Below are positions 10,217 through 17,312 of a stretch of DNA of 64,000 nt, one piece after another. The stretch is taken from the NCBI GenBank assembly GCA_020536535.1, contig JAHLWZ010000828.1, forward strand, positions 1 through 64,000, in the 5' to 3' direction. The position numbers and the translations under genes were made by a program. Position 1 is the stretch's first letter. Every line of letters starts with the position of its first letter. This stretch comes from Pelomyxa schiedti (Eukaryota > Protista > Evosea). The notes beneath the pieces are model-generated. The model saw nothing but the letters and a program-made list of their open reading frames with translations. It did no database searches and was not told the DNA's origin.

Positions 10217-11284
10217 TTACACATCCTTCTTTTGTGACTTGCGGATAAGAGACTTGTGAATGTGAGGAATAACGCCACCTCCAGCAATCGTGGCCTGAAA
10301 GTCAAGTTAAAAGCAATCATTTTGCATCACTAGGACTACCTTAATAAGAGTATCGAGTTCTTCATCACCGCGAATGGCGAGCTGTAAGTGGCGAGGCGTG
10401 ATACGCTTCACCTTAAGGTCTTTTGAGGCATTTCCAGCAAGTTCCAGCACCTGTGAGAAATGTTGAAAAGAAATGTATTTACAACTGAAAGGATATTAAC
10501 CTCGGCAGTGAGATACTCCAGAATGGCCGCACTGGATACTATGAGAAAAGAATTTATTTGATTTCGGTAATATACCTATACACAGCGGCAGTAGCACCAA
10601 CTCTTCCGTGAGAACTTGCCTTACTCTTGAGAAATCTGTGAATACGCCCAACAGGAAACTGTTTTGGAGGTCAGTTAAGCGCAAACCACACCAAAGAAGT
10701 GCGTACCTGGAGCCCAGCTCTTTGTGACCTGGAAATTGGCTTGCGCGGCTTGCGTAGAACCTCATCATAATCCTCAGGGTCGTCGCGAGAAGAATGACGG
10801 CGCTGCCTCTGTTGTGGTTGCTGCTGTGGGCGATGTTGCACCTGCCTCTGTTGGTGTGCCTGCTGTTGTTGATTGTGGGATCGCTGCTGCTGTTGCGGCT
10901 GCTGTTGGCGGGGCTGAGCGACCGCCGTAGTGCCTGGGACCCTCGAAACAGGCATATTGTGGTACTGCTGTTGCGCCGCTGACTGAAGGTGTTGCATTCC
11001 TGGCTGGACTGCCTGCGACAACTGGGAGAGCAGCTGGGGCGGAGCTTGCGACATCAACACCTGAGACTGTTGCTGCGTTGCACTTATTTGGGATGGCGAG
11101 CCTGGTTGTTGCGATGGTGGACCCTCCAACACCTGAGACTCCATTGATTGCGATGGGGGTGGTCCTTCCAACACCTGTTTTTCGTCATGTCGATTTTTTT
11201 TTTTTTAAATTTTAATTTTTTGAATATTTTTTTTGGTCAATATTGCGTGTGGATGGCGATTACGGAACGTACTTGTGAAGCCAT
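10217..11284 (-). CDS. H2A.Z: Histone H2A.Z with an SQ/Gln-rich N-terminal extension of about 140 aa
   Basis: Spliced core: SRSQRAGLQ|[27 protein letters not shown]|[11 protein letters not shown]|[37 protein letters not shown]|[25 protein letters not shown], diagnostic of H2A.Z. Exon 1 is ATGGCTTCACAA (11284-11273), spliced to 11174. Confidence 0.95.
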
Positions 11285-11435: not shown

Positions 11436-14400
11436 TCAATTCCAGCCACTGGGAAGAATTTTTCCATCCGCACCCACAATCATGTCCTTGTATGCCACTG
11501 TTTGGTAATTGGGGTTGTGCTCAGGAGACTCTAGCACACGCCGCAGGTGAGCGTATGAATTGAGCCTGTCGATTGCCCAACCTGCGTCACTAGACGCACT
11601 GGGCAACAGTGACGTAATGGAGCAGAATTGCAACTGCTTCTTGAATTTATCTCCTAGTATAACGCTGAGTAGGGCTTGGAACGTGGACCTGTTTTGTGAT
11701 TGTTATTGCTGTGAATGAAGTGTGAATGTACCTGTGGGACACAATGGCCATCCGCTTATAAGTTCGGGATAATTTCACAATGCCTTGGTAAACCCGGTCA
11801 CACATCGACTCCCAATTCTCGAGAGTGATTTGTTTAAACACCTTCGGTGATGATGTTAGAAAATCTAGGGGAATTTGTGACAAAGGATAAAAACCTTCTT
11901 GTAAGTCGAATCAACAAGTGGACCAGTTGTCATAGTAGGATCCAATGCCGGAACTCCTTTCCTGTTAGTAACACTCATAAATTCCGCAAGTGCCGGTTCT
12001 ACTACATATTTTACGTTCAATATCTCCGCAATGATCTTTCGAATGTCAGTGACTTGTTCCAGGGGGAAAACCAACCTTCGCAGTGTGGAGTGCCCGTGTG
12101 AACGGGGAGGATACAATTACATCAATATTCTCAGTTTTCAATCGAAGAGCTAAATCTTCAGCTTGCTTGATGCCTTCATCAGAAAGTGGAGGGTCATGGG
12201 GGTACGTGGCTTTGGGAACCCATGTGAGATCCTCATAGTCAACTCGGAATCCATGCCTTTTTTCTTTTTAACTGCCCAAATAAAATAACTAGCTGAAAAA
12301 TATCTAACCTGCACAAGAAAATGGCATGTCTACTGGTGAATTTGCTATGCATTTCTTCAAACATTCTGATTGCATTGCGCAAACCGAAACAGAACATGTG
12401 ATCGACTTTGCCAGAGTTTTCTTGTGCTCGGCCAAGGTCAATTAAATACACCATAGGTTTCTGCGGTTCGTTGTCCAGTGAATCTATGAACAAGTTAACT
12501 TGACTTCGGGATTTAGGGGGTTAACCATATACAAATAAAAGCGATGCAGCTCGAAATCTGAACTCCGTCTGTGTTTCAAGTACAGGTTTTAGTTCTCTTA
12601 GCCTTGCAAGCCATTTTGGAATGAGTTCATATCGGTATGAATTTGTTTCTTTGTCTTTAATAAATTCCTGATTTAAGTTAATTTCGTAAGTGTAAGGGCT
12701 TCCCACTTTGAGGAATGCTATAATGTCTGTGTATGTCTGCACTGCATGCCGTGAAATAGTGCCTCCTGTATACCCAGCTACTCTTGTGCCTTAATGGCAT
12801 AAGGAAATAATCAACCAGAAGTTCATTCACCATAAGGTTGGCCAGGAACTTTGAGCATATCACTGGGTTCCCCAACTTTCAAGTCCAGGACTCTAGGTTT
12901 GAGGTATCCCTCAGTGACATTACGCATTATGATGTAAGGTACACCAGACATCATCACATGATCATACATCTTTGGAATAAACTTCTCTAGCTCAGGTAGT
13001 TTATCCCTTATTTGGTTATAGATGCACCATTCATTGTTCCCTAGGGTTTTGGGTCAGTTTGTTTTCTTTTTTGGCAACAAGGCAAAAACCTGATACAAGG
13101 GGCTTATAAATTCGATCACCACAAAGGAGCATCCCCCCATGACCAGCTACGCCTGCAAATGCTTCCATGGGAGGATGAGATGAGGTTGTCGATGTAGTAA
13201 CACTAGTAGTGGAACTTGTCGAAGTCTCACTGCTGGTTGGGGTGCTTGTTGGAAGGGTCGTTGTTGCTAATGGTGTTGTCGTGGCTGTTGCAGCAGTCGA
13301 GGAGGAAGGTGGTGCGATAGGAACTTCAGATTTGTTTGTGGATTGTGCAATAAACAAGTTGTGGCGTGAAACATGTTCTGTTATGGCATTTGTTTGCTCA
13401 TCAGCTACCTGCACTGTGTTACGAGTAGTGACGAAGAAAAGAGCTCACTCTTTCAACAGCTTGGCTGAGTAAGGTGTGTGTTTGCAAGTAGACACGACAA
13501 TATTTGGCTGCACTTTTCTTTACTTTTGGGGTGGACGTTGTTGTCGGAATATGTGTCGAAACCCACTCAAACATTTTCATGTAAGCTGAGTCATAGACAG
13601 AGTCACGATTTTCTGGAGATACCTCATACCCTAAGCAAGCAGTTAACTTCAAGAAATGAGGTAATAAAACAGACCAAATTTTCTTCCATTTACTGACACA
13701 TGTTGCTTATACGTTGGGGAGTTTCGTCTGTAGTTAATGATTACTTCCAGAATGCTGTCATACTTAGACAGCCACGCTTCTACGCAAACCGTTATAGAAC
13801 AACACGGGCCAAGCTGAAGATTGTGAGAATAACTTCACTCACCTTTCTTACTTTGACAGATTTGACTTTGAGGTCACAATCAATATCATCAAAGAACCAG
13901 GATATCAGATCAAGGTCGTCAACAACTGATGAATAGAAGACCTTTTTTATTTTGGTTTTTCCTCCCACTTACTTGGCATTACGCACTTCAATAATATCGT
14001 CTGTCACAGGTGTTGTATCGAGGGATTCAATAAGAATCGAGGGCACAGTGCCTAATACTTCATGGAGGTATGCCCTGGCATTAGAAAACTCCCGATCAAA
14101 TCTAGAATCGTAAGTGGGAAAACAGAAAAAAAAAGTTATTTCATCCACCGTCTGTGGAAGGCTACAATAAGAAGAGTCTCCTTTGCATCTGCAACGCCAC
14201 ATAAAACCGGGAGGTTTAGCAGGGGCTTTTCTGAGACAATTGTTTTTTTATAGTGTCTCAAGCATTTCTCTGTAAGATCTGGCTGCTGTACATAGGGTGT
14301 GCAAATGTAGACACAGTTGATGTCTGTTCTCAACAGAAGACGGTCCAGCTATCATTTGTTTCAGCAAACGGATTTTGGTAGGTTTAAATTCATTTGTTAT

Positions 14401-15795
14401 ATACCTCAAGCTGCGAATTTGTTCTAGAGGCTACAGCAACAACTTCACAGCTTGGGACCTTGGGGAGAATATTTTGGAGCACATGAGTGCCAAAGTTACC
14501 TGCGAAAATTAGAGTGGAGAGGGTATGTATCTGGGCAAACCGGTTCCAATCTGAAGCAGACGTAAATTTGGACTGGACACGGTTTGTGTGGTTTTTAGAG
14601 ACTCAGACACCATATCCATTATGCGTGCTGTTGCAATACAGTGCTCAGGTTTGCATAGGCGGGCAATTGCCTAAAGAAAAGTTTTAAACTTGTCATAAAG
14701 CAATGAAAGAAACCTTTCCCTGGGAAATGGCTAAAAAGTGGTTAATCTGAGCTGCTAAATTGTCTTGAATCATTTCAGGGGTAATCAAGTGCTCGTTTGA
14801 GGTGCCATCCCGAAGTTGGAGAATAATTTTGGGCATTTCATTACTGGGACAGATAGGAGACTGTAAAAGTGAGCAAACTAAAGGTAAATGGTAAGATACC
14901 TTCAATATAATTCGAAGTCCATCACCATACTCAAGATGCGATGTAAGGAGGTGTTCATACACAGCGGAACCCACACGAACAGGAATATCATCATTATGAA
15001 GAGCAACAGCAACAGAGAGGTCGAAGAATGTTGATGTGTTGACCACTTGTTCACAAGTGCCAGCAGTCTCTGGTACATTGTGACAAATAGTGATTGTTGT
15101 GGGATGGTTTTCGTTCACGAAGGCAGTAAGGTCAGAAATGATTCTCAGAAATCTGGCATGCCAACCACAAACCAATTCACAGTCTTGTTGTTGACACGCC
15201 TTATATTTTTTTTTTAATAAAAAAAATGAGGGAAGATGTAACACACTTGGTAAACGGCCCGAACAGACCCACTTAAAAGTGAAAGAGGTGCATCAAAGCA
15301 GAAGATAAAAGAAGATATCTTGCAGTAACTCTCAACAGCAGACAGTCGATCCTCTGGGTTTTCAGCAAAAATAGCCACTGCGTCGTAGCGGCCACCCTGT
15401 TCTATCCATAAGTTCGAAACAATAAAAGCAAAACAAGCATAGCACGGACCAGAACAGCTGCAGTTGCATCGGCCATAGTGGTGAACACCGTCACGCCTGT
15501 CAATCCACGCGTTCCTTCGTTCATAGACGCGGAGTTTGCTTCAGCGACAACTACATGTACCACCTATGTCGTCAATGAGCGTTCTCCCTCCGTAACCCAT
15601 CCGTTGCACAAACAAGCCGACACACACAGGGGATGGCTTCATCCCAGACAGCAGTCTAATCAGCAGCAAGCCCCGCGGCCCACCACACGGCCCTCGTCCC
15701 ACCACGACGCAGCACCTGCACCCCGTCGTCCCCACCGCCGCCGCCGTGCTAGTGCTGGTGCTGTAGCTGTCCCCGGTCGCCAGTGCCGCACTCAT
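11436..15795 (-). CDS. Four-domain protein: Gfo/Idh/MocA (degenerate) + Gfo/Idh/MocA (IolG-like) + inositol polyphosphate kinase (IPK) + histidine phosphatase
   Basis: Spliced reading gives LLQIGT|GNFG, VSEKPL, AFHRR|FDREF (inositol dehydrogenase-like); then GVAGH, PRVLDLKVG, AASLLFVY, YLIDLG (IPK); then FLCR|HGFRVD, SSPFTRALHTA, EPALAEF, IVSH (histidine phosphatase branch 1). In-frame splice junctions were traced between all four domains. The 5' start (15795 or 15476) is less certain. Confidence 0.8.
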
Positions 15796-15848
15796 CCTTT
15801 CGTTTTCTGGTTTTTTTCCCTGAAGGCCGCCAAAGCCGAAATTGCAAT

Positions 15849-17312
15849 ATGCGGGGAAGAGGGGGCCGCGGCAGGAGTGCGAGCGGAGTGGGTCCGCACG
15901 ATGCGGGAAGCAGGGGCAAGCGGGGTCGGCCAGGGGAAGAAGGCGGCAGGGGGGGTGGCGAGGAGGACGGCGTCGCGGATGTGGTGTCCAGGGAGGAGCT
16001 GAGGAAACGGAGGCCGATATACATGGATGCGTTCACCTCGTTCCGCAGGGAGATGGGTATGGACGACGAGGCCGCGGGTGCTAATGCGGCCGGGGAGCCC
16101 ATCCAGGGGAAGGACTTGGCAAGGCAGAAGGAGAAACACGAGGCGGAAGTAAAACGGCTAGCACAAGGGACAAAGCAGGAAGCAAAGGAGGACAAGTCTG
16201 TACTGGTCGCTAGAATTCCGGAAACTGCAACTCCGGAGGAGCTGCAGGCTTTCTTGTCTGTAAAGGCTGGACGTGTCAGGTACTTCGGCTGTCGTTGTGA
16301 TACATGGCTTATTCTGATCTCACTCAAACTCAAGGACGGTTACATTCAAGTACAAGCGGAAGAAGAAGGGCGAAAAAAAGTTCACTGGCACGGCAGTGGT
16401 GGAGATGGCCAAGTTGCAAAGTGCCTATAAAGTATTCTCAAATCTCTTCCCTATTCCAAAATTTAGCACAACAAAACGCAGGCTGTGGAACTGGATGGTC
16501 ATAGCTTCCAAGGCGCATTACTAAAAATTAAGAGGATGGACCCAACTTCTACAAAGCTTAAGAAACTGCATAATGCCCTTGTCGACGAAGAGGCCAGTAT
16601 TTTTGTTGGCAACCTGGCCTTTGGAACTTCTGAGATAACTCTACAAAAAGGTAAGGCCCACCTTTGGCATAGAAAACAAACACGCTTACATTACTATTTA
16701 GTTTTTAGTCGATATGGAGATGTGATCCGAGTCAGTTTGCCTCGAAACAAAGTAACCAAGCATCCCCGTGGATTTGCTGTTGTAGAATTTGCCGGTGCTG
16801 CCAGTGCCAAGCATGCGGCAATGAAACACAACGGAAAGACCATCGATGGAAGCCCCGTTGTTGTGAAAGTCTACACCGACCCCCACGACGAACCCGGGGA
16901 GCAGGTAACACATCAAGTAAGGCGGCTAGACAACATCGCAAGTGAACCCTTGGCAACAGGATCATCAGTGAAAGAGGCAGCACCAAGTGAGACCTCCGAT
17001 GTGAGTGACAGAGTTCTGGAGCTGTTCACAGGGCCAACCAGAGGCAGGGGTCGTGGGATGGACATGGGGAGTGGAAGGGGAAGGGGAACAGGGAGAGGAA
17101 GAGGAAGAGGAAGGGGAATGGGAATGGGAATGGGAATGGGAATTAGAGGAGGATTTGCAACTGCAGCAGGCAGAGGCAGAGGCAGAGGCAGAGGAAGGGG
17201 TACAGGCACAGGGACCAGGGGAAGAGGACGAGGCACCAGAGGCAGGGGCCGCCGAGGAAGCAGCTCTGCCGACGGACCCTCACCCCCAAGTACCAAAAGA
17301 AGGATGGTATAG
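15849..17312 (+). CDS. Two-RRM RNA-binding protein with a C-terminal RG/GRG-rich tail (nucleolar-type)
   Basis: SVLVARIP...KFTGTAVVEM (RRM1), SIFVGNLAF...HPRGFAVVEF (RRM2), (GRG)n and (GM)n repeats, terminal basic NLS-like TKRRMV. Confidence 0.85.

What the first reader, a model, noticed from the sequence alone, without database searches (positions are those of the whole stretch)
11436..15795. Candidate new inositol system: dehydrogenase-like x2 + inositol polyphosphate kinase + histidine phosphatase in one polypeptide
Manual splicing gives one frame through Gfo/Idh/MocA domain 1 (degenerate, FDAPL...CGWHARF), domain 2 (GTGNFG, EKP, FHRRFD, close to myo-inositol 2-dehydrogenase IolG GFNRRFD), a Thr/Ser linker, an IPK domain (GVAGH, PxxxDxKxG at about 12868-12897, ASLL, IDLG) and directly an RHG histidine phosphatase (RHG split by intron 12257-12308). 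The known bifunctional inositol pyrophosphate enzyme PPIP5K/Vip1 uses a different kinase fold (ATP-grasp) and a branch-2 acid phosphatase, and IPK-family enzymes are normally stand-alone. Unusual inositol isomers (neo-inositol polyphosphates) have been reported in the archamoeba Entamoeba, and inositol epimerisation can go through dehydrogenase/inosose steps. Inference: a convergent kinase/phosphatase switch for inositol (pyro)phosphates, gated by or coupled to inositol/NAD(H)-binding modules, possibly handling non-myo isomers.
Basis: partly seen in the sequence, partly recalled or inferred. Interest (0 to 1): 0.92.

Follow-up and report, generated by a model that had tools for sequence, protein, structure and literature searches.

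The report
Amoebal inositol-kinase/phosphatase fusion with dehydrogenase-like domains
This is one real 1147-residue gene of the anaerobic amoeba Pelomyxa schiedti that joins two inactive-looking inositol-dehydrogenase-like domains, an unusual inositol-phosphate-kinase-type domain and a histidine phosphatase; it is conserved across Archamoebae, including Entamoeba histolytica, is named "phosphoglycerate mutase" in databases, and I found no paper that studies it.

Summary
Twenty-one exons on the minus strand (11436-15795; 20 GT-AG introns of 38-64 nt) translate exactly to GenBank KAH3756266.1, "phosphoglycerate mutase" of Pelomyxa schiedti. Pfam, PDB sequence searches and AlphaFold/Foldseek agree on the domain order:
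- Two tandem Gfo/Idh/MocA domains, whose nearest solved relatives are myo- and scyllo-inositol dehydrogenases.
- A Thr/Ser linker.
- An IPK-family kinase, nearest Entamoeba IP6KA and the giant-virus TvIPK.
- A branch-1 histidine phosphatase with no linker before it.

The single-polypeptide reading rests on three exons that each span a domain boundary, a complete Mastigella eilhardi transcript ORF, uninterrupted ORFs on metagenome contigs, and two paralogues each in P. schiedti and Mastigamoeba balamuthi. Entamoeba species carry a 677-696 aa core. Every true database hit to the kinase exon has the phosphatase fused behind it.

Kinase and phosphatase catalytic residues are intact. Both dehydrogenase-like domains have lost catalytic residues. 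The kinase's substrate loop is short and acidic (GEPSD) where TvIPK has the basic RKRK cluster that binds InsP6, so a canonical inositol-pyrophosphate switch is doubtful and the substrate is unknown. The sequences are public but misnamed, and I found no paper describing the fusion. It is a new variant of the bifunctional kinase/phosphatase kind.

The parts
11436..15795 (-). Complete coding region, 21 exons and 20 GT-AG introns (38-64 nt), 1147 aa = Pelomyxa schiedti KAH3756266.1
   Evidence: The spliced translation is identical to P0021.
14584..15723 (-). Gfo/Idh/MocA-like domain 1 (aa 25-322), degenerate: interrupted Rossmann motif VVVGRGPCGGPRG, FDAPL in place of EKP, deletion at the Asp-x3-His site
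   Evidence: The family profile A3 hits inositol 2-dehydrogenase 4HKT at 1.3e-27. hhalign to domain 2 gives 97% probability, E 6.6e-11. AF2 predicts a Rossmann plus beta-sheet fold. Foldseek top hits for the two-domain model are inositol dehydrogenases, though the output does not say which domain they cover. Motif table.
13364..14571 (-). Gfo/Idh/MocA-like domain 2 (aa 327-625): GTGNFG, EKP (Lys409) and FHRRFD kept; catalytic Asp-x3-His replaced by Ser477...Asp481
   Evidence: Pfam GFO_IDH_MocA 3e-07. 4HKT inositol 2-dehydrogenase at 1.5e-07, with the alignment showing tiHDfD against vvDDlD. Family motif table.
14541..14670 (-). Exon (aa 294-336) spanning the last helix of domain 1 and the first Rossmann strand of domain 2
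   Evidence: Exon map. Aligned without a break to M. balamuthi P0024.
13169..13363 (-). Thr/Ser-rich low-complexity linker (aa 626-690), specific to P. schiedti
   Evidence: It appears as a gap in the alignments to Mastigamoeba and Mastigella.
13090..13408 (-). Exon (aa 611-716) spanning the end of domain 2, the linker and the IPK N-lobe (GVAGHGG, IYK712PL)
   Evidence: Exon map. It is one open frame with no stop between the domains.
12332..13168 (-). IPK-family kinase domain (aa 691-912): Lys712, D769-L-K771-V-G, ASLLFVYD, I-D877-L-G-R880
   Evidence: Pfam IPK 8e-20. EhIP6KA 4O4C at 1e-11 and TvIPK 8T8V at 5e-10. Foldseek hits EhIP6KA, IPMK, TvIPK (TM 0.79) and IP3K.
12764..12873 (-). Atypical substrate loop G773-EPSDMLKVPGQPYGTRVAGYTG (split by intron 12830-12790): short, acidic, without the helical insert
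   Evidence: Alignment to TvIPK puts PSDM opposite R132-K135 (contact residues listed in PMC10897400). The AF2 loop has low confidence and no helix. The motif is conserved across the family.
12309..12483 (-). Exon (aa 862-919) carrying the IPK C-lobe (IDLGR, last helix) and the first strand of the phosphatase (RHAIFLC)
   Evidence: One uninterrupted ORF holds both. The junction KF(V/T)xRHA(V/I)FLCRHG is nearly invariant in the family.
11550..12331 (-). Branch-1 histidine phosphatase domain (aa 913-1110): R920-H921-G, R974, E998, H1063
   Evidence: Pfam His_Phos_1 6e-22. PDB sequence hits: PspA, Huf/tau55, Sts, EPPase. Foldseek: Huf, tau55, Sts-1/2, EPPase. Residue table.
12257..12308 (-). 52-nt intron that splits the Arg codon of the catalytic RHG motif
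11439..11549 (-). Conserved C-terminal tail SPEHNPNY...YKDMIVGADGKILPSGWN, predicted disordered, no PTS1
   Evidence: Conserved in subfamily A and, more loosely, in Entamoeba. pLDDT is below 50.

Best explanation
The locus encodes one 1147-aa cytosolic multidomain enzyme of an Archamoebae-specific family. Its working core is a rigid kinase/phosphatase pair. A divergent IPK-fold kinase with an intact ATP-Lys, DxKxG and Mg-Asp is joined without a linker to a catalytically complete branch-1 histidine phosphatase. This pair most likely adds and removes a phosphate on the same small inositol-derived (cyclitol) metabolite. That is the logic of PFK-2/FBPase-2 and PPIP5K, built from different parts.

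The two N-terminal domains descend from inositol 2-dehydrogenases but have lost catalytic residues. They most likely act as ligand-binding (inositol and/or NAD(P)(H)) or oligomerisation modules, not as dehydrogenases.

The substrate is probably not InsP6 or InsP7 bound in the canonical way, because the substrate loop is short and acidic.

Shown: the gene structure, the domain identities, their conservation and the state of the catalytic residues. Inferred: the activities, the substrate class and the regulatory role.
For: Gene model and single polypeptide:
- The spliced model is identical to KAH3756266.1.
- Three exons span domain boundaries.
- A complete Trinity ORF of Mastigella eilhardi (P0029, 1189 aa) is colinear and 55% identical over aa 232-1146.
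- Single ORFs of 1114-1373 aa on metagenome and Logan contigs hold all domains.
- The protein is 44% identical to M. balamuthi g7671 over 1052 columns.

Family census:
- All 7 true hits to the IPK exon among 1.84 billion representatives carry His_Phos_1 directly downstream.

IPK-phosphatase module:
- The AF2 model has pLDDT 79 and pTM 0.78, and the junction is invariant.
- Kinase residues K712, D769, K771 and D877 are kept, as are phosphatase residues R920, H921, R974, E998 and H1063.

Dehydrogenase-like domains:
- The EKP lysine is absent in domain 1 across the whole family. In domain 2, Asp-x3-His has become Ser...Asp in this protein and is variably lost in relatives. Entamoeba lacks the Rossmann half altogether.
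- Both domains are nearest to myo- and scyllo-inositol dehydrogenases.

Organism context:
- E. histolytica is listed with 4 IPK, 0 IPPK and 0 PPIP5K genes (PMC8024741).
- Archamoebae have a dedicated inositol metabolism, with a peroxisomal myo-inositol dehydrogenase (PMC8629394 and PMC8887013).
Against: - No activity, substrate or ligand was tested.
- I saw no RNA evidence for this particular P. schiedti gene. The deposited model comes from Augustus, PASA and EVM.
- The DxKxG Asp and the Mg-binding Asp are not universal in the family: Asn, Thr or Ser replace the first in several members, and His or Ser replace the second in two metagenome members. Some members may therefore be inactive.
- The acidic substrate loop could mean the kinase domain binds something unrelated to inositol.
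- Domain 2 keeps GxGxxG, EKP and RRFD, so residual redox activity cannot be excluded.
- pTM of 0.49 for the two dehydrogenase-like domains gives no information on how they pack.
Confidence: 0.55

Rival explanations
1. One reading: a convergent PPIP5K-like switch that makes and destroys inositol pyrophosphates (InsP6 to and from InsP7/InsP8), gated by the dehydrogenase-like modules.
For: The nearest solved kinases are the pyrophosphate-forming EhIP6KA and TvIPK. E. histolytica is listed without PPIP5K (PMC8024741). The catalytic residues of both enzymes are intact.
Against: In TvIPK the four loop residues R132-K135 are among the nine basic residues that contact InsPs. They align to P-S-D-M in the invariant GEPSD motif, and K76 aligns to Ser. 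The helical insert of EhIP6KA is missing; the segment is about 26 residues shorter. Branch-1 histidine phosphatases are not among the three families a 2026 review names as acting on PP-InsPs, going by its abstract and a term search that found no 'branch 1'.
Confidence: 0.15
2. The kinase acts on free or poorly phosphorylated cyclitols (myo-, scyllo- or neo-inositol, or an inosose). The C-terminal half of dehydrogenase-like domain 2 serves as the ring-binding module, which would make this the entry point of a lipid-independent inositol phosphate pathway.
For: The substrate loop is acidic to neutral. The part conserved in all members, including Entamoeba, is the substrate-binding half of an inositol-dehydrogenase-like domain plus kinase plus phosphatase. 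The nearest GFO relatives bind free inositols.
Against: No known IPK-family member phosphorylates free inositol (my own knowledge, not checked here). This is pure inference.
Confidence: 0.15
3. A true multi-enzyme in which domain 2 is still a working NAD(P)-dependent inositol dehydrogenase or epimerase, coupled to phosphorylation.
For: Domain 2 keeps GTGNFG, the EKP lysine and RRFD. M. balamuthi paralogue B keeps EKP plus the His.
Against: The Asp-x3-His pair is Ser...Asp here. Either the Lys or the His is lost in most members. Entamoeba has no Rossmann half.
Confidence: 0.08
4. As annotated: a phosphoglycerate mutase.
For: Database names only. Membership of the histidine phosphatase superfamily.
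Against: The phosphatase domain is closest to PspA, Huf/tau55, Sts and EPPase. It carries their RHGxRxD-type start (RHGFRVDY), and the one chain named phosphoglycerate mutase among the sequence hits scores only 7e-04. The name also ignores 900 residues of other domains.
Confidence: 0.02
5. Two or three adjacent genes wrongly merged by gene prediction.
For: Intergenic spacers in this window can be about 150 nt. There are in-frame Met codons at aa 311-313 and aa 691.
Against: Boundary-spanning exons, the Mastigella transcript ORF, uninterrupted metagenome ORFs, and colinear paralogues in three genera.
Confidence: 0.02

Closest known systems
Entamoeba histolytica IP6KA (PDB 4O4B-4O4F) and Terrestrivirus TvIPK (8T8U-8T97), small IPK-family inositol pyrophosphate kinases
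   Same: Same fold and the same catalytic Lys, DxKxG and Mg-Asp. They are the best sequence and structure matches to the kinase domain.
   Different: Those enzymes stand alone and have a basic substrate loop or helices. Here the loop is short and acidic (GEPSD), and the domain sits between a dehydrogenase-like domain and a phosphatase.
PPIP5K / Vip1 / Asp1 bifunctional inositol pyrophosphate kinase-phosphatase
   Same: A kinase and a histidine-phosphatase-superfamily domain in one chain, and the logic of a two-way switch.
   Different: Its kinase is an ATP-grasp fold and its phosphatase is branch 2 (acid-phosphatase type); the domain order is the same but the domains are unrelated. E. histolytica is listed as having none (PMC8024741).
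6-phosphofructo-2-kinase / fructose-2,6-bisphosphatase
   Same: A kinase fused N-terminally to a branch-1 histidine phosphatase that reverses the kinase reaction on a small signalling metabolite (textbook knowledge).
   Different: Its kinase is a P-loop fold, not IPK, and its substrate is a sugar phosphate.
myo-/scyllo-inositol 2-dehydrogenases (IolG type; 4HKT, 3EUW, 4MKZ; archamoebal peroxisomal myo-IDH)
   Same: Both N-terminal domains share the fold and are nearest to this clade.
   Different: The catalytic Lys (domain 1) and the Asp-x3-His pair (both domains) are missing. There is no PTS1. The domains are tandem and fused to other enzymes.
Sts-1/2, ecdysteroid-phosphate phosphatase, yeast Huf and TFIIIC tau55 histidine phosphatase domains
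   Same: Closest structural relatives of the phosphatase domain, which shares the RHGxRxD-type start.
   Different: Different partners and substrates; none is fused to an IPK.

Membership tests
IPK (inositol polyphosphate kinase, PF03770) | Profile match above the curated cut-off | tested here: met
   71.9 bits against a cut-off of 22.2, E 8e-20.
IPK (inositol polyphosphate kinase, PF03770) | D[I/V]K[I/L]G motif with the transition-state Lys | tested here: met
   D769-L-K771-V-G773; motif as defined in PMC10897400.
IPK (inositol polyphosphate kinase, PF03770) | [V/I]DF motif: Mg-binding Asp plus spine Phe | tested here: inconclusive
   I-D877-L: the Asp is present and Phe is replaced by Leu.
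IPK (inositol polyphosphate kinase, PF03770) | IPK fold (N-lobe, C-lobe) | tested here: met
   Foldseek hits EhIP6KA, IPMK, TvIPK (TM 0.79) and IP3K, E about 1e-12.
IPK (inositol polyphosphate kinase, PF03770) | Basic inositol-phosphate-binding loop or helices between DxKxG and the GxRxxG strand | tested here: not met
   The loop is EPSDMLKVPGQP, with no helix. TvIPK R132-K135 align to P-S-D-M.
IPK (inositol polyphosphate kinase, PF03770) | ATP-dependent phosphorylation of an inositol phosphate | not testable with these tools
   Needs an enzyme assay.
Histidine phosphatase superfamily, branch 1 (PF00300) | Profile match, RHG, second Arg, proton-donor Glu, second His | tested here: met
   78.7 bits, E 6e-22. 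R920-H921-G922, R974, E998 and H1063 are present. Fold confirmed.
Cofactor-dependent phosphoglycerate mutase (the database name) | Closest relatives and substrate-site motifs of dPGM | tested here: not met
   Top PDB relatives are PspA, Huf/tau55 and Sts. A PGAM chain scores only 7e-04. The domain starts RHGFRVDY.
Gfo/Idh/MocA oxidoreductases (inositol 2-dehydrogenase clade) | Fold and profile match | tested here: met
   Domain 2: Pfam 31.4 bits against a cut-off of 24 and 4HKT at 1.5e-07. Domain 1: family profile to 4HKT at 1.3e-27. Foldseek.
Gfo/Idh/MocA oxidoreductases (inositol 2-dehydrogenase clade) | Catalytic Lys of EKP and the Asp-x3-His pair (Lys97/Asp172/His176 of B. subtilis IolG; numbering from my own knowledge) | tested here: not met
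   Domain 1: FDAPL with no Lys, and a deletion at the D-x3-H site. Domain 2: Lys409 is kept but Asp is replaced by Ser477 and His by Asp481.
PPIP5K / Vip1 | ATP-grasp kinase domain plus branch-2 histidine acid phosphatase domain | tested here: not met
   The kinase is IPK fold and the phosphatase matches His_Phos_1.

The most novel reading that the evidence does not exclude
The IPK-like domain, with its acidic, helix-less substrate loop, may be a kinase for free or barely phosphorylated cyclitols (myo-, scyllo- or neo-inositol, or an inosose). The remnant inositol-dehydrogenase domain would hand the ring to it, and the fused histidine phosphatase would reverse the step. That would make this the unidentified first enzyme and control valve of the lipid-independent inositol phosphate pathway in Archamoebae, including E. 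histolytica.
Probability: 0.12. Interest if true: 0.88.

Novelty: new variant of a known kind. Interest (0 to 1): 0.72.

Why it matters
Inositol phosphate and pyrophosphate signalling is thought to rest on four kinase families, with PPIP5K as the only kinase/phosphatase fusion. Archamoebae depart from this in three ways. They lack PPIP5K and IP5 2-kinase (for E. histolytica, PMC8024741). They also keep a peroxisomal inositol dehydrogenase.

This protein physically couples an IPK-fold kinase, a branch-1 histidine phosphatase and inositol-dehydrogenase-derived modules. It is conserved from free-living Pelomyxa to the pathogen Entamoeba. It is therefore a concrete, clonable candidate for lineage-specific control of inositol metabolism, and the only related sequences found came from Archamoebae or unassigned metagenome contigs. 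It also corrects a misleading annotation that has been propagated across at least eight deposited genomes or transcriptomes.

Tried and rejected
- My first hand-spliced model (1158 aa) was 94% identical to the deposited protein. Two in-frame introns had been missed and three were misplaced. I replaced it with the exact 21-exon model.
- A homology search with the 199-aa domain-1 exon found nothing, because of the tool's length window.
- A profile search with the full-length alignment A1 was swamped by GFO words and scored only 4 proteins.
- A pattern scan of 185,579 prokaryotic species genomes found no relative. The scan uses only two peptide patterns, so it is weak negative evidence.
- A metagenome scan gave only 4 short loci.
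- Peroxisomal targeting: no PTS1-like C-terminus in this protein or its relatives, so a link to the peroxisomal myo-IDH compartment is rejected.
- Literature searches for the fusion found no description. Terms tried: IPK + histidine phosphatase + fusion; Archamoebae + inositol + kinase; Entamoeba + phosphoglycerate mutase; EhIP6KA; the accession EAL51905; and a 2026 review of PP-InsP phosphatases. Subscription papers, such as the 2012 E. histolytica IPK paper (recalled from memory), could not be read.
- The scan's own notebook had no other inositol finding.


Full report
**What is in the sequence.** The region is part of an intron-rich eukaryotic genome. Stop-free segments on the minus strand carry recognisable pieces of three Pfam families: GFO_IDH_MocA (1e-05), IPK (6e-08 and 6e-04) and His_Phos_1 (1.5e-11). 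I spliced these by hand using GT-AG introns of about 40-60 nt and obtained one open frame of 1158 aa running from the ATG at 15795 to the stop at 11436.

A database search later returned GenBank KAH3756266.1, named "phosphoglycerate mutase [Pelomyxa schiedti]" (P0021, 1147 aa). After I adopted its five differing intron calls, a 21-exon, 20-intron model (introns of 38-64 nt) reproduces that protein residue for residue. The deposited models were made with Augustus and refined with PASA and EVM using transcriptome data (PMC8887013). I could not inspect reads for this gene.

**Domain identities.**
- Whole-protein Pfam gives GFO_IDH_MocA at aa 332-412 (3e-07), IPK at 807-904 (8e-20) and His_Phos_1 at 916-1107 (6e-22).
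- Domain 1 (aa 25-322) is invisible to Pfam in this protein. A profile of the family's N-terminal regions hits inositol 2-dehydrogenase 4HKT at 1.3e-27 and myo-inositol dehydrogenase 3EUW. That profile also aligns to the domain-2 profile with 97% probability.
- Domain 2 alone hits 4HKT at 1.5e-07.
- AF2 models both domains with a Rossmann-plus-sheet pattern (pLDDT 77). Foldseek's best matches are scyllo- and myo-inositol dehydrogenases.
- The kinase domain is nearest E. histolytica IP6KA (1e-11) and the giant-virus TvIPK (5e-10) by sequence. By fold it matches EhIP6KA, IPMK, TvIPK (TM 0.79) and IP3K.
- The phosphatase is nearest PspA, Huf/tau55, Sts-1/2 and ecdysteroid-phosphate phosphatase.

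**One polypeptide?** Four lines of evidence say yes.
- Three exons each span a domain boundary: 14541-14670 (end of domain 1 and start of domain 2), 13090-13408 (end of domain 2, linker and kinase N-lobe) and 12309-12483 (kinase C-lobe and first strand of the phosphatase).
- A complete Trinity ORF from Mastigella eilhardi (P0029, 1189 aa) is colinear and 55% identical over aa 232-1146. It lacks the Thr/Ser linker, so the linker is a P. schiedti insertion and not an intergenic spacer.
- Gene callers that do not model introns found single ORFs of 1114-1373 aa with all domains on metagenome and Logan contigs. One of those contigs also carries a Sec23/24 gene, so it is eukaryotic.
- P. schiedti and M. 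balamuthi each have two colinear paralogues.

The AF2 model of kinase plus phosphatase has pTM 0.78, and the junction KF(V/T)xRHA(V/I)FLCRHG is nearly invariant. Both point to a rigid two-domain module.

**Distribution.** The 89-aa kinase exon was scored against 1.84 billion representative proteins and gave only eight hits. Seven are true, and all seven have His_Phos_1 directly behind the IPK domain. No canonical stand-alone IPK reached E 1e-3, so this is a distinct IPK subfamily that appears to exist only as a fusion.

A tree of the kinase-phosphatase region shows two groups:
- Subfamily A: this gene with Mastigella, and M. balamuthi g7671 with metagenome sequences. The Entamoeba clade is sister to this group.
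- Subfamily B: P. schiedti KAH3756802.1, M. balamuthi g936 and metagenome sequences.

The Entamoeba proteins (E. histolytica EAL51905.1, E. dispar, E. nuttalli, E. marina; 677-696 aa) begin just before the EKP-equivalent position of domain 2. They lack domain 1 and the Rossmann half of domain 2. A pattern scan of prokaryotic species genomes found nothing.

**Catalytic residues.**
- Kinase: Lys712 (IYKPL), D769-L-K771-V-G, ASLLFVYD and I-D877-L-G-R880 are all present. Some relatives have Asn, Thr or Ser at the first Asp, and two metagenome members lack the Mg-binding Asp.
- Phosphatase: R920-H921-G, R974, E998 and H1063 are all present.
- Dehydrogenase-like domain 1: the EKP lysine is missing in every family member (E-A/S/P-P; FDAPL here). 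This protein also has a deletion at the Asp-x3-His site.
- Dehydrogenase-like domain 2: GTGNFG, EKP and FHRRFD are kept. The Asp-x3-His pair of inositol dehydrogenases reads Ser477...Asp481 (tiHDfD in 4HKT against vvDDlD here). Across the family either the Lys or the His is often lost.

I therefore regard both N-terminal domains as non-catalytic descendants of inositol dehydrogenases.

**The substrate question.** The TvIPK paper lists nine basic residues that contact every InsP substrate. Four of them (R132-K135) lie in the loop after DxKxG (PMC10897400). In the alignment that loop (GARKRKSH) is opposite GEPSDMLK. K76 is opposite a Ser. Only the catalytic Lys, the Arg after the Mg-Asp and an Arg in the GxRxxG strand are kept.

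The loop motif GEPSD(F/M)x(K/R)...QPYG is among the most conserved parts of the non-Entamoeba members; Entamoeba has the neutral GQTxxxSKMEQQPFG. The segment is about 26 residues shorter than in EhIP6KA. AF2 models it as a low-confidence loop without helices. A canonical InsP6/InsP7 site is therefore unlikely. The substrate could be a less charged cyclitol, or basic residues could come from a neighbouring domain. I could not decide this without model coordinates or assays.

**Comparison with what is known.** The logic of a kinase fused to a histidine phosphatase is that of PFK-2/FBPase-2 (also branch 1) and of PPIP5K (ATP-grasp plus branch 2). The protein is a member of neither, because the kinase fold differs. 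It passes the sequence, motif and fold tests for IPK membership but fails on the basic substrate site. It is not a phosphoglycerate mutase in any tested respect.

I found no paper describing the fusion. A survey that lists four IPKs, no IPPK and no PPIP5K for E. histolytica contains neither 'fused' nor 'fusion' (PMC8024741). Work on archamoebal peroxisomes shows that inositol dehydrogenation matters in this lineage (PMC8629394, PMC8887013), but this protein has no PTS1.

**Verdict.** The sequences themselves are public and misnamed. I rate it a new variant of the bifunctional kinase/phosphatase kind, with interest 0.72.

Noticed in passing
window 11439-11549 (aa 1111-1147): The C-terminal tail SPEHNPNY...YKDMIVGADGKILPSG[W/F/Y]N is almost identical in Pelomyxa, Mastigella, Mastigamoeba and metagenome members and is recognisable in Entamoeba. 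AF2 nevertheless predicts it as disordered (pLDDT below 50). It may dock on another domain or on a partner protein.
   Followed up: partly
L001:2077-5736 (protein P0004): In this metagenome orthologue the called ORF turns into Phe-rich nonsense right after ...VAIVSHR. That is exactly where P. schiedti has its last intron, so this otherwise intron-poor organism probably shares the intron and the gene caller read through it.
   Followed up: no
proteins P0025/P0038, P0026, P0027, P0041 (Entamoeba spp.): The Entamoeba form starts inside dehydrogenase-like domain 2, just before the EKP-equivalent CQVP. It keeps the His of the Asp-x3-His site but has no Rossmann half. E. marina has two copies.
   Followed up: partly
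window 13169-13363: The Thr/Ser-rich linker of about 65 residues is absent from the Mastigella and Mastigamoeba orthologues. It is a species-specific low-complexity insertion with strong GC skew.
   Followed up: partly
window 14404-14436 (aa 358-368, VAVASRTNSQLE): At the end of the second Rossmann strand of domain 2, inositol dehydrogenases have an Asp that selects NAD (from memory, Asp35 of B. subtilis IolG; the PDB entry for the A12K/D35S mutant with NADP appears). This protein has Ser-Arg there and relatives have Thr or Ser. If a dinucleotide is bound at all, it may be NADP(H).
   Followed up: no
window 15783-17312, plus strand: A divergently oriented neighbouring gene begins within about 100 nt of this gene's ATG, in a 60-64% GC spacer. 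Its downstream ORF looks by eye like an RRM-type domain followed by long RGRG repeats; I ran no profile search on it.
   Followed up: no
window 10671-11174, minus strand: The next gene downstream, about 260 nt after the stop codon, has a Gln/Ser-rich ORF that another first-stage note on this window (s1-396665) calls an H2A.Z variant. I did not examine it.
   Followed up: no
proteins P0008 (Logan, 485 aa) and P0007/P0019: Some subfamily-B members have a degenerate phosphatase motif (CRD or CRHA in place of CRHG). P0007 and P0019 also carry an insert of about 150 residues, rich in Ser, Ala and Asp, in the kinase C-lobe after the Mg-binding Asp.
   Followed up: no
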